The translations under genes and the position numbers were made by a program. Positions 31,602 through 59,067 of a stretch of DNA of 64,000 nucleotides are shown one piece after another (positions within the stretch are counted from its first letter, which is position 1; the number at the start of each line of letters is the position of its first letter). The notes beneath the pieces were generated by a model. The model was given only the letters and a program-made list of their open reading frames with translations, did no database searches and had not been told where the DNA came from. The stretch covers positions 1-64,000 of the IMG/VR virus record IMGVR_UViG_3300028829_003504; one strand, written 5' to 3'.

Positions 31602-34600
31602 ATGCTAGGAAATCAAATAGCCAGAGCCATAGGCACACTTAAGTCAACTGGAATACTTTCAAATTTAACTGTAGACTACCAGAGTCAGAGTGCCTCCGTA
31701 CAACTCCTCACTAGTACCTCAAGTGCTGATGAAAACGGCTTTAATAGAACTACGGTTGCTACTCACATGATGCCAGAACGTGGCTACCTGATTAGAACTG
31801 AGCAAGTGTATCAGGATGGTGATGAAGACAACGAGTTTGAAATGAAAACTGCGTTCACCATGAATGAAGAATATATAGGAGACCCTGAGTGGGCTGAACG
31901 TCTATACAATATGGGTATTGTTCCTCAACTAGCTAGCCCTAAACATAAAGTATGTTCAGTAGGCTACTGTGAGAAAGAAGACAAATGGTACGGCTGGAGC
32001 CATAGAGCGATTAGTGGTTTCGGAGTAGGTAGTGAGGTGACCAGAGGTCATTGTGCATATAAACCTTCTACTAAGGCAGAATTCCTACAAAGCTTAGATG
32101 ATTGGTATCGCCACAACGGCAACGAAGTGAATGTTATTCCTACTGACGATGGTGCTATCGTAAACACTACATCTTTTCGAGTGACTGATGGTAAGCCTTT
32201 ACGATATACCCACATTGAAGAGTTTAAACCAGGTCGCGGTTCATTTAAGGTTTGTGATATGGATGAGGCTAAGACACTAGCCTTGGATTTCGCCGAATCC
32301 GTCAGCGCTGCTGCGGTTAACGTAGATTCCGCTATAGTACAGGATTCGGTACTCAGTGAACTGTCTAAACGTTTTCAAGAGATGTCGGCACGTATGCTAA
32401 CGAAGGCCAATCAACTACTTCGTATACAGAGATTCCTCAATGTAAATACAGATGGAGACTTAGACGGTCCAGGCTGCGCCGATAAATTTCATACTAATCT
32501 TAAATCAACCATAGAAGCCCTTAACGGTCCTAATGACAGTGACGCTAACTTTGGTCTTACTACACGTAAAGCTTCTTTGGTTAATATACCCTCAGGTGAT
32601 AATCAACCTGATGTAGGAACTCCTCCTAAACCAGTCGAAGAAGTAGGCCCTGTTGTAGGGGAAAAAGACGACGATGAAGATTACACGGATAGACTAGATA
32701 GGCTTAAAGCTCGACACGGTAGTACAAACTACATTGAATCAGAAATACAACAACGTACCATTGAGATGTTCTCCGGAGCTGAAAGTCCCGTTAGCCTTAG
32801 CATGGAGAGTGAGGAATCAGAAGAAATACTGGCTGAGTGCGAACACAGTCGTATTATCCGTAACGTTATCCACTTTGACGAGTATGCCCCTGCCTCGGGT
32901 TTACCCTTTGTTAAAAACAAAGAAAATGGTAACACGAGTAGCATCCTGGATGCCAATTTGTCGGATTATAAGGTCATGGACGAACGTTGTGCTTCTATAA
33001 TACAAGAAGCCCGACTTAAAATTATATCTAATCGAGAAGCGTATAAGGCCCGAACTGAAAAGCAGAAATCAGAAGATGACAACTGGTCAAAGGTCATCAA
33101 TAAGATGCTCACTGGGTCAGAGTTGAATGAAGGTCCAGTTAGATCCAGTAGAACGAGCGGTGTTGATTCAGGTATGGCCTCAGAAGCAGCGGCAAAGTTT
33201 GCACCTACTGAGTTTAGTTGGTTCAAGTATATAGGTAAGAAGACACGCAGCTTCGATCACCATAAGCAAGACGTTGAACTTGAAATCGAAACTAATGAGC
33301 GTTTCGGTATTATGTATAATTCAAGACTTAAAGCCTACATTATAGTTGAAGCATCTATGTTTGGCGCAAGGGGAGAGGTGTGGGAATTCCGCATTAACGA
33401 AAAGGAACTTAAACTTCTAGTTAAGTCTAGTAGACCTTTCAATGGTAAAATCGGCGGACAGAAGATTGTTAAAGGTGAACCTACTAACTTAAACCTGTTT
33501 ACTAATCGTAAGCAAGTAGAAGTTAAACCGTTGCAGGATACAGGAATGGTTGCTCCTAATCGACGAGTTAAAAAGACGGGAGGTGTTAAGATCATTAAAC
33601 GCCTTGATATGGATGATGTTGAAGACGGTGTTAAGATTAAACGTAAGCCTGTCTATATTGGTGTGTTCCAACCTAGCGGTAGTAGTGACAAGTATAACTT
33701 GGTGACCAACGAGAAACTATCCGAATTGAAGACTGACCTACAATCTAGAATGGAAGCCTTGCCTGATATCGGCTCGTTTGCTACTATATACCAATTACGT
33801 TCTGATAATCGTTTCGTCATTAAGGCATTGAAGGCTAAAGTACCTAAGATACAACCAGCACATAAATCCATACTTGATCGTGAGTCTCTCATAAAGCCTG
33901 TTGAGTTCAAAGGTAAAAATATACGTTTACGTAATGATAGTGTACCACTACCTCATTTCCAACCAGGTGCTCCTGAGTTTACCGAACCTATGTTCTTCGG
34001 TAACCAGACAAACGTGTTGGCTGAGATTCGTGACTCCATAGTATTGGATAAATACTTTAGTGGTGCATTCACTTTGCTTGACCCTAAAGGTTATATGCAA
34101 AAGAAATCTTACAAGCGATCGTTAAACCAAGGTAAGGCTAGTGAGCGTCGAAGCAAAATGGGTATTAGAGATTTAAAGTCGAAAGGTATGGTGTTCTTAG
34201 AACTAGTTGCTTTGCATGATTCAAATTCTTTTGAGGACGAAGCTTATGCCTTACTTATACGTTTACGTAAACAGTTCGGTAAGAAGATTATAGGTCAGGT
34301 CGAAGTGAAGCGTTTGAAGCTAGATGGTATCAATAAAGAGTACCTAACAGTTAGACTAATCGCTAACATTAAGCCAGTGAGCGATGAAATTAAAAAACGA
34401 TCACTTAAACTGTATGACCTAATTGAGTCTAATAAGCTTTCTATAGGAATCAATCAATATGGATTTATGGTAGGTGACAAGCTAATTCCTTGTGCTGTGA
34501 TTGAACCCGTGTATACGGAAGGTAGCATTAAGGTCCAACCTACTAATGCTCAGCTACGTCCAGAAGTTGTGTCCGATTTATATGACTTAAATGGTACTGT

Positions 34601-34613
34601 TAAACTATTCTAG
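31602..34613 (+). CDS. large multidomain protein, probably virion-internal
   Basis: 1003 aa; SVGYCEKEDKWYGWSHRA domain, acidic linker with S-x-S motifs, then a basic domain homologous to 8661..9335. Confidence 0.65.
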   Translation: MLGNQIARAIGTLKSTGILSNLTVDYQSQSASVQLLTSTSSADENGFNRTTVATHMMPERGYLIRTEQVYQDGDEDNEFEMKTAFTMNEEYIGDPEWAERLYNMGIVPQLASPKHKVCSVGYCEKEDKWYGWSHRAISGFGVGSEVTRGHCAYKPSTKAEFLQSLDDWYRHNGNEVNVIPTDDGAIVNTTSFRVTDGKPLRYTHIEEFKPGRGSFKVCDMDEAKTLALDFAESVSAAAVNVDSAIVQDSVLSELSKRFQEMSARMLTKANQLLRIQRFLNVNTDGDLDGPGCADKFHTNLKSTIEALNGPNDSDANFGLTTRKASLVNIPSGDNQPDVGTPPKPVEEVGPVVGEKDDDEDYTDRLDRLKARHGSTNYIESEIQQRTIEMFSGAESPVSLSMESEESEEILAECEHSRIIRNVIHFDEYAPASGLPFVKNKENGNTSSILDANLSDYKVMDERCASIIQEARLKIISNREAYKARTEKQKSEDDNWSKVINKMLTGSELNEGPVRSSRTSGVDSGMASEAAAKFAPTEFSWFKYIGKKTRSFDHHKQDVELEIETNERFGIMYNSRLKAYIIVEASMFGARGEVWEFRINEKELKLLVKSSRPFNGKIGGQKIVKGEPTNLNLFTNRKQVEVKPLQDTGMVAPNRRVKKTGGVKIIKRLDMDDVEDGVKIKRKPVYIGVFQPSGSSDKYNLVTNEKLSELKTDLQSRMEALPDIGSFATIYQLRSDNRFVIKALKAKVPKIQPAHKSILDRESLIKPVEFKGKNIRLRNDSVPLPHFQPGAPEFTEPMFFGNQTNVLAEIRDSIVLDKYFSGAFTLLDPKGYMQKKSYKRSLNQGKASERRSKMGIRDLKSKGMVFLELVALHDSNSFEDEAYALLIRLRKQFGKKIIGQVEVKRLKLDGINKEYLTVRLIANIKPVSDEIKKRSLKLYDLIESNKLSIGINQYGFMVGDKLIPCAVIEPVYTEGSIKVQPTNAQLRPEVVSDLYDLNGTVKLF

Positions 34614-38498: not shown

Positions 38499-39236
38499 TT
38501 AGTTTAAGCCAAGGTGCACTTCAATTGCGTTGGTAAGTGTAGCCATACCAACTTCGACTGATGCAAATATGACCGTGTCACCTGCCTTTAAATCAAGAAA
38601 TATGCTAGGTTGGGTGCGAACAAGTATAAATTTACCGTCCTTCTTAGTTACCATATCCATATCCTGCATAGCTATACTGACGGTACTGGCGTTCCAATCG
38701 TGTTTACTTTTAACGTGTGTCAAGAACGAAGCCCAAGGAATCATTAAGTCACCTGTGATTTTAGGAATGGTAACATCTGTACTTTGGGTTACTGGCTTTC
38801 TTACTGGTATGCGAGCCCGGGCATGCCTAGCACTTAGCTTAGGTTCTACCTCCGGCTTAGTTGGTTCTTCTGAAACCTCCACGGCAGCTTTAGTGTTTTG
38901 CCTATCGTTAAGTTTTCCTAACGTAGAAGCTTCTTTAGACCAAGCTTTCTTTGCGCGGTCCTTAACTTGAGCTTCAACCTCAAGCTTAGCCTTCATCTCT
39001 TCTCTATTCTTTTTAGTGAGAGTAGAGTTCCACCAGCCATTCATTTTAATTTCATTAAGTTCAACTAATCCTGATTTCTGTAGCAATTCAATAACTTTCT
39101 TACGTTTGATTTTCTTAGTCACGGTTAAGTCATAGATTACGTCGAAGGCTTTTGACAATTGTACGTAAATAGCGCTTTCGTGTTCAGGCTCTGTCTCATT
39201 CGCTAATTCTGCGAACTTTCTTAGATCTAATTCCAT
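38499..39236 (-). CDS. hypothetical protein
   Basis: 245 aa ORF. Confidence 0.65.
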   Translation of the reverse strand: MELDLRKFAELANETEPEHESAIYVQLSKAFDVIYDLTVTKKIKRKKVIELLQKSGLVELNEIKMNGWWNSTLTKKNREEMKAKLEVEAQVKDRAKKAWSKEASTLGKLNDRQNTKAAVEVSEEPTKPEVEPKLSARHARARIPVRKPVTQSTDVTIPKITGDLMIPWASFLTHVKSKHDWNASTVSIAMQDMDMVTKKDGKFILVRTQPSIFLDLKAGDTVIFASVEVGMATLTNAIEVHLGLN

Positions 39237-51135: not shown

Positions 51136-53142
51136 CTATATAGCTACTTCACCATCTAGCTTGGGGCCATGTTCATAATTATGGAGAACAAAATGGTCAC
51201 CTGTCAACTCGTCGAAACTCTCAAAGGGCTTGACTTCTAATGAAGGCATAGGTTTAACTTCTTGCTTCATCTGTTCTTCAAATAGATCTCGATGGAAGTC
51301 ATAGATATGATAGTCACCAAACATGTGAAAGAAGTTACGTGCTGCCATACCTGACTTCTGGGCAAAGGCCATAAGTAACGCACTGTAACTGCCTATGTTA
51401 AAGGGAACTCCGATGAACCAATCCGCGCTGCGCTGGTACATTGTCATATCAATGAAGTACTTAGGTACACCTTTAGAATCGAAGAATTCACCGACGACTC
51501 TTAGATGTTCCTCTTTATCGGCACAAGACATAGAGAATAACTCTTGACTAATTTTACTTTTGATTGTAACCACTACCATAGGGTTCTCAGGATTATAGTC
51601 TAAAAGACCTTCTCTCTCCATGAAGTAAGAGTCTTGCATTAACTCCGCAGTACGTATGTTCGACCAATGTTCATAGCGGTCGGAGTGACTCATAGGACTT
51701 GTACCTAATTGGAACATCATGTGACAGGGAGGTAACGCTTGCTGACCGACCGTTGCGTTTTCATGAGGCTCAAAATATCTTACTTTAGGAGCATCCACGT
51801 AGTCAAGTAAAGCTTCGAGTAATTCCTCCTCGTTCAGACCTTCGGGGAGATCTGAAGGTCCTCCATTGTGTAGGAGACTTTCGCAGTAATCACGCGCTTG
51901 CATTATGGGTGCTTCACCTCCAGAGTCAAGACGCCGTTCGGCCTCATCCATCCACTTCACATTAGCCATTACTTTTTCAATTTCACCGTCCAGATAGTGC
52001 TCTTTGCGATCTACTTGGTTTGCAAATGCTACTTGCGTAACAGGAGTTAAGCCTGGGTTCAAGGCAGTAACTAACATACGGCGGTCATTAGGATTGTTCT
52101 TCAAACTTTCGGCAACGGCATCCAGTTGATCAAACTTCTTAGTATACACAGTATGCTCGGCATCCCATTTACCTTCAATACCTAACGCATTAAGAACTCT
52201 ATAGTAAGTTTCAACGAAAGCGTTGTACTCAGGTAACTCTAAGACATTGTCCCCGAAGTACATTTGGATAGTGCCTTCACTGAGATCACGCCCAGAAGCT
52301 TCGGTAGTAGTAATTATACTAGAGCGCATGCCGTTTTGTTCAAGATAGCCCTGGAAGTCTTCGAGAGTGAAGTCGCCATTTTTAATCTTAGCCCGTAGTT
52401 CTTCATCCATTCTACTAGTTTGGTCAAAAGAGCCTTGTGCAATATAGTTCTGGTTTATTAAGAAGTCAATCATACCAGTATTAGTATCAGCCACGGTGCG
52501 TGTGTCTTCCCATGCTCGCCATTGTGCTCCGTATACAGGACCTAGATTCCCATTGTTGTCAGCCCAACCGTCCCATATTTTAGCACCTAATGTTTTAATG
52601 TTCGTTTCACCTCGACATAGCCAACCCAGCTCTTTCATGATACCTTTAAAGGCTGTGAACTTAGTAGTGACTAGAGGGAAACCATCACGCATATCGAATT
52701 GCATCATGTGGCCGAACAGCTTAGTAGTAGGCGTTGTAGTTCTGTTTCCGCTACGCGCTCCTGCGTAAAGAATGTCCTGAGCCGCAGATAGATACTGTAC
52801 ATCGACATGTCTTTTATTAGGATGATTCTGCCAGGTATTAGGTACTTCTTTTTCTAACGTACCTGATTTAACAAAAGTAATAACAGCATTACGGCCATCA
52901 TAATTACTGTACTGCGCCTGTACTACCACAAGAGGTCCACGTAATGTGTAAGGGCCTGTACGGTCTTCGTAGTGGCAATGCTGTATTAAATCACCTTCCT
53001 TGAAGCGGCTAGACATATCGCGGTCTATATTAAAGAAAGAAACAATATGGTAATGATCAATGTCAGTAGCCATCAGGTAATCACATTTAAGATGGACTGA
53101 TTTACCCATCATAACTTGATAAGGTATTTTAACTGATTCCAT
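51136..53142 (-). CDS. thyA: thymidylate synthase with N-terminal extension and three large insertions
   Basis: NRT, FPLVTTK, EL.W, IWDGWA, LGPVYGAQWR, DRRM, LPPCH, YQRSAD..GVPFN, GDYHIY. Confidence 0.92.
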   Translation of the reverse strand: MESVKIPYQVMMGKSVHLKCDYLMATDIDHYHIVSFFNIDRDMSSRFKEGDLIQHCHYEDRTGPYTLRGPLVVVQAQYSNYDGRNAVITFVKSGTLEKEVPNTWQNHPNKRHVDVQYLSAAQDILYAGARSGNRTTTPTTKLFGHMMQFDMRDGFPLVTTKFTAFKGIMKELGWLCRGETNIKTLGAKIWDGWADNNGNLGPVYGAQWRAWEDTRTVADTNTGMIDFLINQNYIAQGSFDQTSRMDEELRAKIKNGDFTLEDFQGYLEQNGMRSSIITTTEASGRDLSEGTIQMYFGDNVLELPEYNAFVETYYRVLNALGIEGKWDAEHTVYTKKFDQLDAVAESLKNNPNDRRMLVTALNPGLTPVTQVAFANQVDRKEHYLDGEIEKVMANVKWMDEAERRLDSGGEAPIMQARDYCESLLHNGGPSDLPEGLNEEELLEALLDYVDAPKVRYFEPHENATVGQQALPPCHMMFQLGTSPMSHSDRYEHWSNIRTAELMQDSYFMEREGLLDYNPENPMVVVTIKSKISQELFSMSCADKEEHLRVVGEFFDSKGVPKYFIDMTMYQRSADWFIGVPFNIGSYSALLMAFAQKSGMAARNFFHMFGDYHIYDFHRDLFEEQMKQEVKPMPSLEVKPFESFDELTGDHFVLHNYEHGPKLDGEVAI

Positions 53143-55885: not shown

Positions 55886-56207
55886 CGTTGTTTATAAAAA
55901 TACAATCGGCTGATTGCACAAAACATGCCGTACCGGGCGATATCTCAATATTCATTAAGTTGGATATATGCTGCACATCACTTATGAAGGTAGTACCTAA
56001 TATACTAGAATAGAATCCTAAGGATATACTAGGTTCTGACTTGATGCCTTCTCGACCGAACGCCATCATAGCCTTAGCTAGGTCATCCTCCTTTATAGGT
56101 ATGACTACTACTGCCTTAGCTAAGATCTTTAAGAAAGATATTTTGTAGGAACAGGCTGATTTGACAAAAAACCTATCTATTAAATTCTGGACTTTACTAT
56201 CTTCCAT
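55848..56207 (-). CDS. miniature major-capsid-like protein
   Basis: GFYSSILGTTFISDVQHISN...ISPGTACFV aligns with capsid GQIATLQGMTLLTDGYRAPN..LRPGEIYVV. Confidence 0.55.
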   Translation of the reverse strand: MEDSKVQNLIDRFFVKSACSYKISFLKILAKAVVVIPIKEDDLAKAMMAFGREGIKSEPSISLGFYSSILGTTFISDVQHISNLMNIEISPGTACFVQSADCIFINNGEAWLQVDPIWD

Positions 56208-56538
56208 CTCTAAGCTCCTTTACCCTATTGTCTAATACTATTTTGTAGTTGTTACCGTGGCAGTCATCAGGACTGCACCAGCACACCAGTGCTATCTTCT
56301 CACCCTTTAATACCCTAAGAGCAAGTAGATTTAACTGTTTACGTAAATAACACTTACGTTTCATCTTTCTATTTACATAATCACGATGGGCAGCTATTGA
56401 GCGTCCTCGAGTATCTCGGTGCTCATTGTTACCAAACATCGTTGTCCTATCTATAAGAATGTGTGTGTATCCTTCAGGTATAGGTGCAGCACCTGCTCTC
56501 TTACTTACAACAATAATATCATCAGGTTCGAATAGCAT
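56197..56538 (-). CDS. DUF4326-like protein
   Basis: IDRTTMFGN...L.CWCSPDDCHG motif. Confidence 0.75.
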   Translation of the reverse strand: MLFEPDDIIVVSKRAGAAPIPEGYTHILIDRTTMFGNNEHRDTRGRSIAAHRDYVNRKMKRKCYLRKQLNLLALRVLKGEKIALVCWCSPDDCHGNNYKIVLDNRVKELRDGR

Positions 56539-56557
56539 TATTAACCTCCGTTAATCA

Positions 56558-57121
56558 TTACTGACAGGCAAAGTCCCTAGAAGCTTTCGCTTCATGTAAA
56601 CAGAAGGCATTAGCAATCATTTCTTTAGTTATATTAGGATTAACTTCCCACGTTGCTTTTTTAACACAAGCACCTTCAGTGCCGAACAAGTCTTCGGTTA
56701 TGCTAGGCTTATTATATCTAGTTAGCATAAGTATCGTAGGAATTTTCTCTTCCGTGCACACTTCACGTAGGGCTGTCATAACCCAAGTTACTTCACGGCC
56801 GTTTAGACCACACCAGTCGAAGTCTTCAAGTACTATTAATTCAGGTACCTTAGAGAACCTCGCGAGGTGCTTTATGTGATTAGTTATATCGCCAGGTGAC
56901 ATGGAGTATTCGAATACGTCACTGTTTGGGTATTCTTTTCTGTCACGTGCGGCTGAGGTAGAAAATACCATCATATTACATTTAGTATCTAATTCTTTTA
57001 TTACCTGTGACTTACCCGAGTGGCGACCCCATATAACTTTAAGCTCCTCGGTAGCAGACTTGTCCTCAATGCTACTAAGGACGTCATTGATTAAATTGAT
57101 TTGCTCAGGAAATAGATTCAT
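56558..57121 (-). CDS. truncated terminase large subunit ATPase-like protein
   Basis: LFPEQ (Q motif), WGRHSGKS (Walker A), LIVLEDFD (altered Walker B), ATWEVNP...RDFAC; only 187 aa and no nuclease domain. Confidence 0.6.
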   Translation of the reverse strand: MNLFPEQINLINDVLSSIEDKSATEELKVIWGRHSGKSQVIKELDTKCNMMVFSTSAARDRKEYPNSDVFEYSMSPGDITNHIKHLARFSKVPELIVLEDFDWCGLNGREVTWVMTALREVCTEEKIPTILMLTRYNKPSITEDLFGTEGACVKKATWEVNPNITKEMIANAFCLHEAKASRDFACQ

Positions 57122-59067
57122 TAGTATATATCCTTAAGTCCATCTAAACCGTATCCTCTCTCAGGGGCAAGCTCCTCAGAAGTAGGACCCTTAGAAGTGT
57201 CATACTCCACTAGGTCGACGGGGACTGTATCAAAGAAATAAACTGAATCCTCACTATCGTGTTTCTCATAATAGAAGTTACCTGTGGCATTAGGGACTCT
57301 GGTTATGAAAAGCTCATTCATGGCCCTCGTCAAGCACACGTATAGGATTCGTCTCTCTTCTTCGATCTGCTTATCACTACCTTGACTTCGGGCGTGTGGA
57401 TAGGAACCCGAACTTACATTAAGTGCAAAGCAGATTTTAGATTCAGCGCCTTTGGCGGAATGAACTGTTATTATAGTTACTAAGTCATCTTCGTCCGTTC
57501 TATCGGCTTCGGTCGAAGACATAGGTTCCAAAGTAAACGCATCAACAAAACGCTTAACCTTCTTATATCGCTTAGTGATCTTTTGGATAAGATCAAAATC
57601 TTTTTTCCTCTTATCCCAGTCCTTATATCTATTTTTCAGTAGATTAGACATAAGTTCGATAGACGCAGCGATACATTTTTGTGTATCTTCCTTGAGGGCT
57701 CGAATACGTTTAAATTCATCTATGGCCGCTATCCCATGGCGCTCCATACCTTCGTCACTGATGGTACCTTTATCTCTAAAGCTACTTACTATGGTATCTG
57801 CCGTCTTCTGTCCGACTTTAGGCCATAGCTGTAGGTATCTTGACCAGGCAAGGTCGTCACGCCTGTTTACGACTAGGCGTAACAGTGAAACTAAATCTTT
57901 AACATGAGCTGCTTTGTTGATAGCAGTTCCGCCTACGAATAAGTAGGGAATACCTCGTTTAAGGAATTCCGCTTCCACATAGCGAGCATCGTTGGCTGTT
58001 CTAACTAAGACCATCATATCGTTATAGGCTATATCTTTACTATATCTCTGTTCGATCTGATCTGCGACGTACCAAGCTTCTGTATAGTTGTTTTTAAAAT
58101 CCAAAAATTGAGGCTTGTATTCAGCTAGGCCCTTAGCCGCCTTTAAGTTGGCGCTGTAATCTAAGTTAGACTGACCTAACAGCCAGTTCGATACATCTAG
58201 AATTTCTTGATTACTACGGTAGTTAACATTTAAAGGAATGACTTCGCTACTTTTGAAGTTCTTCGTAAACTCGTATATATGCTTGAACTCAGCGCCCCTA
58301 AAGCCGTATATGGATTGCGCAGGATCTCCTACACAAAACAAACGGACTTTTTCTTTCGCAAATAGTCGCAGGAATCTAAACTGAATAGGATTTGTATCTT
58401 GGACTTCATCTACGCTCATTTCGTGAAATCTTGAACATAAATCTTTTCTGAGTTTCGGTTTTGCTTTGAGTGTTTTGACTACCATATCTAAAAGATCATC
58501 GAAGTCCAGGTAACCTCGTTTCTTCTTTGCTTTCTTATATGCAGAAATAATCGACTGACTCTTTTGGATTTCTTCGTCACATAGGTCTGTGTTTTCTTCA
58601 AGGTAGCTCTCTATGTCAATACAAGTGTTTCGACTATATGAGAAATATTTAAGTAGCTGGGTAGAGGTTACATCTAACTTATTCTTCTTATTTTCAAATT
58701 CTTTCCGCGTAAGATCCAGTAGAATCTTCTGGTCCTCAGAATCTAAAATAGTGCTACCTTTAAGCCCGAAACTTTTAGGCATTCGTTTTATCATACGTAA
58801 ACATATAGAATGGAAAGTACCTGTGACTATTTTACGAGCATCAGGGCCAATAGCCTGCGTAAGCCTGTCTTTAATTACTTTGGCTGCTCTGTTTGAGAAC
58901 GTTATTATGATAAGTGCTTTTGGGTCTACGCCTATGCTTATTAGGTACTCGGCCCGTGATATAATCACTTTAGTTTTGCCCGTACCTGCCCCAGCCATTA
59001 CTAATAAATTATTAGATGGACCTTCATAGTAAGCGGCTTTAGCTTGTTGTGTATTTAATTTAGACAT
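57121..59067 (-). CDS. UvrD/Rep/PcrA-family SF1 helicase
   Basis: LNTQQ, AGAGTGKT, TFSNRAA, TFHS, VDEVQDTN, VGDPAQSIYGFRGA, NYRS, TVHSAKGAE, EERRILYVCLTRA. Confidence 0.95.
   Translation of the reverse strand: MSKLNTQQAKAAYYEGPSNNLLVMAGAGTGKTKVIISRAEYLISIGVDPKALIIITFSNRAAKVIKDRLTQAIGPDARKIVTGTFHSICLRMIKRMPKSFGLKGSTILDSEDQKILLDLTRKEFENKKNKLDVTSTQLLKYFSYSRNTCIDIESYLEENTDLCDEEIQKSQSIISAYKKAKKKRGYLDFDDLLDMVVKTLKAKPKLRKDLCSRFHEMSVDEVQDTNPIQFRFLRLFAKEKVRLFCVGDPAQSIYGFRGAEFKHIYEFTKNFKSSEVIPLNVNYRSNQEILDVSNWLLGQSNLDYSANLKAAKGLAEYKPQFLDFKNNYTEAWYVADQIEQRYSKDIAYNDMMVLVRTANDARYVEAEFLKRGIPYLFVGGTAINKAAHVKDLVSLLRLVVNRRDDLAWSRYLQLWPKVGQKTADTIVSSFRDKGTISDEGMERHGIAAIDEFKRIRALKEDTQKCIAASIELMSNLLKNRYKDWDKRKKDFDLIQKITKRYKKVKRFVDAFTLEPMSSTEADRTDEDDLVTIITVHSAKGAESKICFALNVSSGSYPHARSQGSDKQIEEERRILYVCLTRAMNELFITRVPNATGNFYYEKHDSEDSVYFFDTVPVDLVEYDTSKGPTSEELAPERGYGLDGLKDIY

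What the first reader, a model, noticed from the sequence alone, without database searches (positions are those of the whole stretch)
56558..57121. Minimised terminase-ATPase-like protein with altered Walker B and no nuclease
It has TerL hallmarks in order: Q motif LFPEQ, Walker A WGRHSGKS, and ATWEVNP...RDFAC, which I recall as the end of the ATPase domain in large-phage TerL. It is only 187 aa, Walker B reads LIVLED rather than hhhhDE, and it stops where the nuclease would start. The ATPase domain is the part recognised by terminase-sensing Avs proteins, so a catalytically dead decoy is plausible (inference).
Basis: partly seen in the sequence, partly recalled or inferred. Interest (0 to 1): 0.72.

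Follow-up and report, generated by a model that had tools for sequence, protein, structure and literature searches.

The report
Shrunken terminase-ATPase-like orphan phage protein
A marine jumbo phage carries a small, very rare gene that looks like a cut-down and probably non-working copy of the motor half of its own DNA-packaging enzyme. It is always paired with a DUF4326 gene, its job is unknown, and the idea that it is an immune decoy is untested.

Summary

**Link to the terminase.** It is related to the phage's own large terminase (TerL; genome 120270-123830, 1186 aa, complete apart from an intein at Walker B). The significant sequence signal is confined to the last ~33 residues (TWEVNP...RDFACQ against TerL PTWEMNP...RDYGAQ; hhalign E about 2-4e-8). 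The Walker A match, the motif order and an ESMFold model (TM 0.82 to TerLs of the same family) fit a whole reduced TerL ATPase domain. AlphaFold models show only a generic P-loop fold.

**The family.** Only two relatives turned up in about 15 billion proteins. Both lack the Walker A lysine and the Q motif, and read DN where Walker B sits. ATP hydrolysis is therefore not the family's conserved function. All three genes sit directly upstream of a DUF4326 gene, in two different neighbourhoods, so the pair forms a two-gene cassette.

**Verdict.**
- A split terminase is excluded.
- The decoy idea has no direct support. The published analogues, T4 vs.8 and Ksap2, activate Avs2 rather than block it.
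- Best reading: a degenerate TerL-ATPase paralogue reused as a binding module alongside DUF4326. This is a new variant of a known kind.

The parts
56558..57121 (-). 187-aa ORF: reduced TerL-ATPase-like P-loop protein (P0001)
   Evidence: ORF listing. Homologues. TerL relation.
57131..57135 (-). AAGGA Shine-Dalgarno-like site, 9 nt before the ATG. The ATG (57119-57121) overlaps the TAA of the upstream UvrD-like gene by 1 nt.
   Evidence: Sequence.
57101..57115 (-). LFPEQ (residues 3-7), Q-motif-like. Present only in this member of the family.
   Evidence: Not significant on its own.
57008..57031 (-). WGRHSGKS (residues 31-38), a Walker A-like P-loop on a predicted strand-loop-helix. Relatives read WGKETKRH and WGEDTGRV.
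   Evidence: The BCSR5 TerL P-loop reads VWGQRSGK.
56822..56839 (-). LIVLED (residues 95-100), at the Walker B place on predicted strand 95-99. The acid pair is inverted (ED). Relatives read DN.
   Evidence: TerLs have invariant DE.
56702..56716 (-). YNKPS (residues 136-140). NKPS is invariant in the family. By position it corresponds to TerL motif III (NISSPSS).
   Evidence: This part of the alignment has low confidence.
56561..56656 (-). ATWEVNP...RDFACQ (residues 156-187): the lid-end segment, the only part with statistically significant similarity to TerL.
56197..56538 (-). 113-aa DUF4326 gene, the conserved downstream partner of the cassette. GGAGG ribosome-binding site at 56545-56549.
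   Evidence: Pfam PF14216, E 8.7e-10. Same adjacency in L003, L004 and L005. Alignment.
57121..59067 (-). UvrD-like SF1 helicase gene directly upstream. This is context, not part of the conserved cassette.
   Evidence: Pfam UvrD-helicase, E 2e-63. Absent upstream of the relatives.

Best explanation
The gene encodes a stand-alone, shrunken and fast-evolving derivative of the N-terminal ATPase domain of this phage lineage's own large terminase (the phrog_17415 / PF27249 type). It has no nuclease domain and lacks the N-terminal zinc-ribbon region.

It is not part of the packaging motor, because the genome has a complete TerL. ATP hydrolysis is not the family's conserved activity. The window's copy keeps a P-loop and may still bind a nucleotide, but its Walker B acids are inverted. 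Its two relatives have lost the P-loop altogether.

What is conserved is the C-terminal third: NKPS..TE.LF..EG...TWE.NP...[DN][FY].C, the motif III and lid region of TerL. The inference is that the protein works by binding rather than by catalysis.

It forms a mobile two-gene cassette with a DUF4326 protein, which the literature predicts to be a rhodanese-phosphatase-like enzyme acting on ADP-ribose-derived or nucleotide phosphates. The cassette sits among replication and nucleotide-metabolism genes and is probably expressed with them.

Most likely mechanism (inferred, not shown): it is a non-catalytic adaptor or nucleotide-binding partner for the DUF4326 enzyme, in an accessory function that may be conflict-related.
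For: **Shown: relation to TerL.**
- The ORF and its motifs are present.
- A full TerL lies elsewhere in the genome.
- Profile similarity to TerL: E 1.8e-8 for the family, 4e-7 for P0001 alone, 4e-5 for P0002 plus P0003 alone, with clean controls.
- The two are reciprocal best paralogues within the genome.
- An independent TerL, from Burkholderia phage BCSR5, matches the same tail and has a 'WGQRSGK' P-loop.
- The ESMFold model (pLDDT 0.77) matches PF27249 TerL clusters best, at TM 0.82 and 0.79 over 171-174 residues, against about 0.66-0.71 for the other clusters listed (mostly helicases). The top language-model neighbours are Terminase_6N clusters.

**Shown: the family and its catalytic motifs.**
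- The family has 3 members.
- The catalytic motifs are not conserved.
- The P-loop place is the most variable stretch between P0002 and P0003, which are 57% identical overall.
- TerLs keep these residues invariant.

**Shown: the cassette.**
- DUF4326 lies directly downstream in all members, with overlapping stop and start in L003-L005.
- The cassette sits in different surroundings in the window and in L003/L004.
- The partner is more conserved than the small protein: 47-50% and 70% identity, against 27-29% and 57%.

**From the literature.** The DUF4326 function is a prediction (PMC9503650, PMC7824862).
Against: - With the last 35 residues removed, sequence similarity to TerL is no better than shuffles. 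Whole-domain descent from TerL therefore rests on collinearity and one ESMFold model.
- AlphaFold2 models are poor to moderate (pLDDT 57 and 67, with the C-terminal third below 50). Their best matches are generic ASCE ATPases and helicases (KaiC, RecA, RadD, UvsW, Dda, Pex1/6), not TerL.
- The ESM model of P0003 is poor and also generic.
- No Pfam hit; the PHROG TerL hit is only E 0.034.
- The predicted complex with DUF4326 gave no answer.
- The adaptor role is guilt by association from only two independent gene contexts.
- Expression timing is inferred from position only.
Confidence: 0.5

Rival explanations
1. Immune decoy. The protein mimics the TerL ATPase domain and binds TerL-sensing host receptors (Avs1-3, Upx) without activating them, shielding the real terminase.
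For: - TerL-like tail, and in this copy a TerL-like P-loop.
- A rare, fast-evolving accessory gene placed in an early-type gene block.
- The same window carries a protein with a Tad6 (Thoeris inhibitor) domain.
- The partner domain DUF4326 is found fused to SLOG-family domains (YAcAr, mSLOG, DNA_processg_A). It is also fused to homologues of the anti-Avs3 protein ORF83 in amoeba viruses (bioRxiv 10.1101/2025.06.06.658234).
- EcAvs2 needs only the ATPase domain (PMC13601566).
Against: - No direct evidence.
- Ligand binding is what switches Avs on.
- The two published stand-alone TerL-ATPase-like proteins, T4 vs.8 and Ksap2, are activators of Avs2 (PMC13601566, PMC11564622).
- EcAvs2 and SeAvs3 contact the ATP-loaded active site, and SeAvs3 also binds the nuclease domain. 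Two of the three family members lack the P-loop, and all lack the nuclease.
- The paper searches here found no TerL-like anti-Avs protein; the anti-Avs proteins discussed (ORF55, ORF83) are a DNA ligase and a nucleotide-binding Rossmann-fold protein.
Confidence: 0.12
2. Modulator or poison of the packaging motor. The retained lid/motif III region docks onto TerL (the phage's own or a competitor's), TerS or the portal. This would cap or delay motor assembly, for example keeping TerL silent early or excluding a co-infecting relative.
For: - The part shared with TerL and most conserved in the family is the motif III and lid end.
- Catalytic residues are dispensable in the family.
- From established knowledge of TerL motors (P74-26, T4), the lid subdomain takes part in inter-subunit and inter-domain contacts.
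Against: - The gene sits among replication and nucleotide-metabolism genes, far from the packaging module at about 118-124 kb.
- Its conserved partner is DUF4326, not a packaging protein.
- No relative was found elsewhere in the collections that yielded at least 285 TerLs of this type. Phages with close TerLs therefore seem to manage without it (inference).
Confidence: 0.1
3. An unrelated ASCE P-loop domain (helicase- or RecA-like) that shares only a short C-terminal segment with TerL, either by recombination or by chance. On this reading it is not a TerL ATPase paralogue.
For: - Without the tail there is no significant similarity.
- AlphaFold-based fold searches rank helicases, RecA/KaiC and AAA+ proteins above TerL.
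Against: - The tail sits in the same place relative to the P-loop core as in TerL.
- Walker A aligns to Walker A with the same 'WG..SGK' context as a TerL.
- The ESMFold model superposes on TerL over 174 of 187 residues.
- T4 gp17 residues 137-357 align over model residues 1-174.
- The TerL ATPase fold is itself helicase-like, so generic hits are expected.
- The genome's other P-loop proteins are not hit by the family HMM.
Confidence: 0.12
4. An active small NTPase or nucleotide kinase serving the neighbouring nucleotide-metabolism genes.
For: - An intact GKS P-loop in this copy.
- Neighbours are dCMP deaminase, thymidylate synthase and a MazG-like protein. In L003 a guanylate kinase lies nearby.
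Against: - The P-loop is lost in both relatives, and the Walker B place is non-canonical in all three.
- No kinase or NTPase family hit in Pfam, NCBIfam, PHROGs or the PDB sequence search.
Confidence: 0.07
5. Half of a split terminase, or a decaying remnant of a TerL duplication with no function.
For: It is short, its catalytic motifs are degenerate, and the family is rare.
Against: - A complete TerL is present.
- Three members at 27-57% identity keep the same length (184-187 aa), conserved motif blocks and the same partner gene.
- It has a good ribosome-binding site and compact operon placement.
Confidence: 0.03

Closest known systems
T4 vs.8, a stand-alone terminase-ATPase-like protein (PMC13601566; T4 NC_000866 64253-64912, 219 aa)
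   Same: Both are small stand-alone proteins of a large phage that resemble the ATPase domain of that phage's own TerL. Both lack a nuclease domain, are encoded away from the packaging genes, and have no known function.
   Different: - No detectable sequence relation beyond the P-loop, so the two probably arose independently from different TerL lineages.
- vs.8 keeps canonical Walker A and Walker B (IIDE). This family does not.
- vs.8 is not paired with DUF4326.
- vs.8 is reported to be toxic with EcAvs2. Nothing has been tested for this protein.
Ksap2 (Bas60_220), KpAvs2-stimulating protein 2 (PMC11564622)
   Same: A small, taxon-restricted phage protein of unknown function with a weak structural likeness to a TerL ATPase domain.
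   Different: - Ksap2 is an experimentally shown binder and activator of KpAvs2.
- Its sequence was not compared here.
Large terminase ATPase domain of jumbo phages (phrog_17415; PF27249 by precomputed annotation). The solved reference is the T4 gp17 N-domain (PDB 2O0H).
   Same: - C-terminal TWE.NP...RD[FY]..Q segment.
- In this copy, a TerL-style P-loop.
- The same order of strand and motif elements.
- It ends at the ATPase/nuclease boundary.
   Different: - About 120 residues from P-loop to lid, against about 200 in TerL.
- No N-terminal zinc-ribbon region and no nuclease domain.
- Walker B DE is not kept, and Walker A is not kept in the relatives.
- It does not reach any family threshold.
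DUF4326-containing modules of large DNA viruses (PMC7824862, PMC9503650)
   Same: The partner gene is a typical stand-alone viral DUF4326. As in the literature, it sits among replication and nucleotide genes.
   Different: The described associations are fusions to Macro, SLOG, NADAR, replication or R-M domains. The papers read here do not mention pairing with a TerL-ATPase-like protein.

Membership tests
Large terminase subunit (TerL) | Significant match to a TerL family profile at family level | tested here: not met
   No Pfam hit. phrog_17415 only E 0.034, over residues 153-185. Custom TerL HMM E 5e-7, but only through the 35-residue tail.
Large terminase subunit (TerL) | Walker A P-loop with conserved Lys-Ser/Thr | tested here: inconclusive
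   Present in this protein (GRHSGKS) and aligned to the TerL P-loop. Absent in both relatives.
Large terminase subunit (TerL) | Walker B hhhhDE with catalytic glutamate | tested here: not met
   LIVLED here, MVMLDN and VIYMDN in the relatives. DE is invariant in 25 TerLs.
Large terminase subunit (TerL) | C-terminal RNase H-like nuclease domain | tested here: not met
   The protein ends at the position aligned to TerL residue 428 of 728. The stop codon follows directly.
Large terminase subunit (TerL) | TerL-type ATPase fold including the lid subdomain | tested here: inconclusive
   [not shown]
Stand-alone TerL-ATPase-like phage proteins (vs.8 type) | A small separate protein homologous to the ATPase domain of the phage's own TerL, with a full TerL also present | tested here: met
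Stand-alone TerL-ATPase-like phage proteins (vs.8 type) | Sequence homology to T4 vs.8 | tested here: not met
   BLASTP finds only the P-loop, E 0.09.
Stand-alone TerL-ATPase-like phage proteins (vs.8 type) | Recognition by Avs2-type sensors | not testable with these tools
   Needs co-expression or binding assays.
Anti-Avs / immune decoy proteins | Blocks activation of a TerL-sensing receptor | not testable with these tools
SF1/SF2 helicases and RecA-like ATPases | ASCE core fold | tested here: met
   [not shown]
SF1/SF2 helicases and RecA-like ATPases | Family sequence motifs, and a second RecA-like domain (helicases) or oligomerisation elements | tested here: not met
   A single 187-aa domain. 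No Pfam, NCBIfam or PDB sequence hit.
DUF4326 (partner gene only) | Pfam PF14216 above the gathering score | tested here: met
   39.6 bits against a cut-off of 25. Confirmed.

The most novel reading that the evidence does not exclude
The TerL-ATPase mimic and its DUF4326 partner together form a two-gene counter-defence cassette aimed at terminase-sensing immunity (Avs1-3- or Upx-like). The mimic would engage the sensor, or a nucleotide signal, without triggering it, and DUF4326 would remove a nucleotide or ADP-ribose-derived product. This would be the first terminase-mimic immune antagonist.
Probability: 0.1. Interest if true: 0.8.

Novelty: new variant of a known kind. Interest (0 to 1): 0.48.

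Why it matters
Stand-alone copies of the terminase ATPase domain have only just come to notice, because one of them (T4 vs.8) and a look-alike (Ksap2) set off Avs2 immunity. Their own function is unknown.

This family is an independent second origin of the same idea, in marine jumbo phages. It offers two extra clues: catalysis has been given up, and there is a fixed partner gene, DUF4326, itself an unsolved domain linked to NAD/ADP-ribose conflict systems.

It gives a small, tractable pair of proteins for two questions. What are terminase-domain paralogues for? Are they liabilities (immune triggers) or weapons (mimics)?

Tried and rejected
- **Family libraries.** Pfam, NCBIfam, PADLOC and PDB sequence searches of the protein and the family gave nothing usable.
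- **Phage records.** Megablast and tblastn against phage records found no relative. The single weak hit turned out to be a TerL.
- **Wider collections.** Scans of IMG/VR, JGI metagenomes (twice) and GTDB genomes returned only a contig carrying an identical copy of the protein.
- **AlphaFold2 models.** With 2 and 3 sequences the models were too weak at the C-terminus to discriminate TerL from helicases.
- **Complex with DUF4326.** The predicted complex gave no answer, which is no evidence either way.
- **TerL against solved structures.** The TerL family profile finds no solved TerL by sequence, so the lid motif could not be mapped onto a crystal structure that way.
- **N-terminal alignment.** hhalign's low-confidence extension places the family's N-terminus on TerL 226-258 instead of on the P-loop. 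I rejected this because it puts a predicted helix on a TerL strand. The alignment of P0001 alone places P-loop on P-loop.
- **Rejected readings.** Split terminase: a full TerL is present. Helper of the UvrD helicase: that adjacency is not conserved. Recent horizontal acquisition: GC equals the flanks.
- **Promoter and terminator scan.** Nothing above chance.

Full report
**The object.** On the minus strand, window 56558-57121 holds a 187-aa ORF.
- LFPEQ at residues 3-7
- WGRHSGKS at 31-38
- LIVLED at 95-100
- ATWEVNP at 156-162
- RDFACQ as the last six residues

An AAGGA lies 9 nt upstream of the ATG. The ATG overlaps the stop codon of the upstream gene by one base, and GC content equals that of the flanks. 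The window is the first 64 kb of a 261,788-bp virus record with direct terminal repeats, that is, a jumbo phage. It was assembled from a marine metagenome.

**Surroundings.** All neighbours run in the same direction. Upstream lie a dCMP deaminase and a UvrD-like SF1 helicase. Downstream lie a DUF4326 protein (56197-56538, with a GGAGG ribosome-binding site), three unknowns, a MazG-like pyrophosphohydrolase, a GNAT, and a long thymidylate synthase. This is a replication and nucleotide-metabolism block, not the packaging module. A promoter and terminator scan gave nothing above chance.

**Is there a real terminase?** Yes. Genome 120270-123830 (minus strand) encodes a 1186-aa protein that matches phrog_17415 'terminase large subunit' at E 2e-243. 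A 460-aa LAGLIDADG intein is inserted between ...RIFG and SVDEIGWFD, immediately before Walker B. With the intein set aside, both halves match an HMM of intein-free relatives end to end. The closest relative is 87% identical and intein-free. The small ORF is therefore not one half of a split terminase.

**Relation to TerL.**
- A search of the genome with the small protein finds, besides itself, only the TerL, at the PTWEMNP...RDYGAQ segment.
- BLASTP against the spliced TerL gives two collinear pieces: the P-loop region and the tail.
- hhalign of the three-member family against 65 intein-free TerLs gives Prob 95.4 and E 1.8e-8. Thirteen reversed or shuffled controls reach at best E 0.009.
- The tool's own hhalign gives E 3.5e-8 over 33 columns.
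- P0001 alone gives E 4e-7, with Walker A on Walker A.
- The two relatives alone give E 4e-5 in the same register.
- Within the genome's ORFs, the TerL HMM's second hit is this ORF (E 5e-7, next 1.3). The family HMM's second hit is TerL (E 3e-4, next 0.075).
- The one weak tblastn hit among 50,697 phage records lies inside an unannotated TerL of Burkholderia phage BCSR5. Its P-loop reads VWGQRSGK and its lid end aligns to residues 114-186.

**Limits of that evidence.** When the last 35 residues are removed, neither the family nor P0001 alone scores above shuffles. The statistically secure homology is the C-terminal segment. The rest is supported only by collinearity and by predicted structure.

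The structure evidence is mixed:
- The ESM Atlas model of P0001 (pLDDT 0.77) has as best neighbours two TerL clusters of the same PF27249 family, at TM 0.82 and 0.79 over 171-174 residues. The other clusters listed, mostly helicases, score about 0.66-0.71. Its nearest language-model neighbours are Terminase_6N clusters.
- My AlphaFold2 models were weak (pLDDT 57 and 67, with residues 137-187 below 50). They show a strand-P-loop-helix start and a five-stranded alpha/beta core.
- Their best matches are generic ASCE proteins such as KaiC, RecA/Rad51, RadD, UvsW, Dda and Pex1/6.
- The ESM model of P0003 is poor and generic.

I read this as a strongly diverged, shortened TerL ATPase domain, at about 70% for whole-domain descent. 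An unrelated ASCE core with a TerL-like tail is the main alternative.

**The family.**
- A word-index search of 5.8 billion clusters found only the protein itself.
- An exhaustive phmmer run over 1.84 billion representatives found one relative, P0002 (184 aa, 29% identity, E 3e-14).
- A profile search added P0003 (187 aa).
- IMG/VR holds only a contig with an identical protein. Two metagenome scans and one genome scan found nothing.

In the alignment, the relatives read WGKETKRH and WGEDTGRV where this protein has WGRHSGKS. They have no Q motif, and they read DN where this protein has ED. Between P0002 and P0003, which are 57% identical, the P-loop place is the most variable stretch and the C-terminal third is almost identical.

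By contrast, 25 TerLs keep G189 Q190 R191 G193 K194 S195 and D313 E314 invariant. The family has therefore dropped the constraint on catalysis. It keeps Y.[MI]S..D, NKPS.TE.LF..EG and TWE.NP. From my own knowledge of T4 gp17 mutagenesis (Rao laboratory), even conservative changes at D255 or E256 abolish function. An ED pair is thus expected to be hydrolysis-deficient; this is recalled, not tested here.

**The partner.** In all three members a DUF4326 gene follows directly, with overlapping stop and start in L003, L004 and L005.

In L003 and L004 the cassette follows a 277- or 248-aa protein, and in L003 a guanylate kinase lies just before that protein. The window's homologues of these two lie at 38.5-39.8 kb, whereas the window's cassette follows UvrD at 57 kb. 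The pair therefore moves as a unit.

The partner is better conserved than the small protein: 47-50% identity to the window's copy and 70% between the two relatives.

The Aravind laboratory describes DUF4326 as a rhodanese-phosphatase-superfamily domain of large DNA viruses. [quoted passage not shown] Atlas neighbours confirm fusions to YAcAr, mSLOG and DprA-like SLOG domains. A preprint notes DUF4326 fused to amoeba-virus homologues of the anti-Avs3 protein ORF83 (10.1101/2025.06.06.658234). A predicted complex of the two window proteins gave no answer.

**Comparison with what is known.**
- Evans et al. 2026 (PMC13601566) report that T4 vs.8 is an uncharacterised ATPase-like protein homologous to the T4 terminase ATPase domain, with Walker A and B conserved, and that it is toxic with EcAvs2.
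- The same paper shows that EcAvs2 is activated by the ATPase domain alone through an ATP-bridged interface. SeAvs3 also binds the nuclease domain. Upx binds an unfolded ATPase core.
- Béchon et al. 2024 (PMC11564622) show that Ksap2, a small protein with weak structural likeness to a TerL ATPase domain, binds and activates KpAvs2.

Stand-alone TerL-ATPase-like proteins are thus a known, if unexplained, kind, and where tested they are triggers. T4 vs.8 (219 aa) shares only the P-loop with this protein, so this is an independent instance derived from a different TerL lineage. The paper searches and the anti-defence preprint read here turned up no TerL-like anti-Avs protein.

**Verdict.**
- 'Minimised terminase-ATPase-like protein with altered Walker B and no nuclease' is supported, with the caveat that only the lid end is statistically secure.
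- 'Catalytically dead' is likely for the family and plausible for this copy, which may still bind nucleotide.
- 'Avs decoy' remains a speculation, and the nearest published analogues point the other way.
- My best explanation is a non-catalytic binding module working with DUF4326 in an accessory, possibly conflict-related function. The mechanism is inferred from gene linkage only.

Noticed in passing
Own genome C1:120270-123830 (outside the window; L006): The TerL carries a 460-aa LAGLIDADG intein immediately before Walker B. Among the 120 closest TerL homologues, 48 have large inserts. These cluster at three places: about residue 191 (inside Walker A), about 305-312 (before Walker B) and about 127 (the CxxC region). 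Some homologues carry two inserts.
   Followed up: partly
window 31602-34613 (+): A 1003-aa protein with an N-terminal Tad6 domain ('Type I Thoeris inhibitor', PF25188, E 2.7e-42) and a KMPT-N domain. A homologue lies on L003. It is a likely counter-defence gene in the same early region.
   Followed up: partly
L008:1771-4026 (Burkholderia phage BCSR5, MW460245.1 221950-224205): This ORF is annotated 'hypothetical protein' but is the large terminase: phrog_17415, E 8e-205.
   Followed up: yes
L009:3001-3327 (Ralstonia phage RSL2, NC_028950.1 177028-177354): The DUF4326 match begins 108 nt upstream of the annotated DNA polymerase start and runs into that gene. The same layout appears in RSF1, FLC6 and SURPRISE13-type jumbo phages. 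RSL2-type phages therefore probably encode a DUF4326-DNA polymerase fusion with a mis-set start.
   Followed up: no
Own genome C1:192610-192837 (+) (L013): A stand-alone YAcAr (SLOG-family) domain ORF of about 135 aa. This is the domain class most often fused to DUF4326 elsewhere, but here it is encoded 136 kb from the DUF4326 gene.
   Followed up: no
window 51136-53142 (-): The thymidylate synthase is unusually long at 668 aa. BLASTP against the 573-aa homologue on L003 splits into two pieces, which suggests insertions or an added domain.
   Followed up: no
window 38499-39236 (-), L003:8921-9754, L004:329-1075: A conserved 245-277-aa protein with no family hit. It lies directly upstream of the cassette in L003 and L004, but next to guanylate kinase in the window.
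   Followed up: partly
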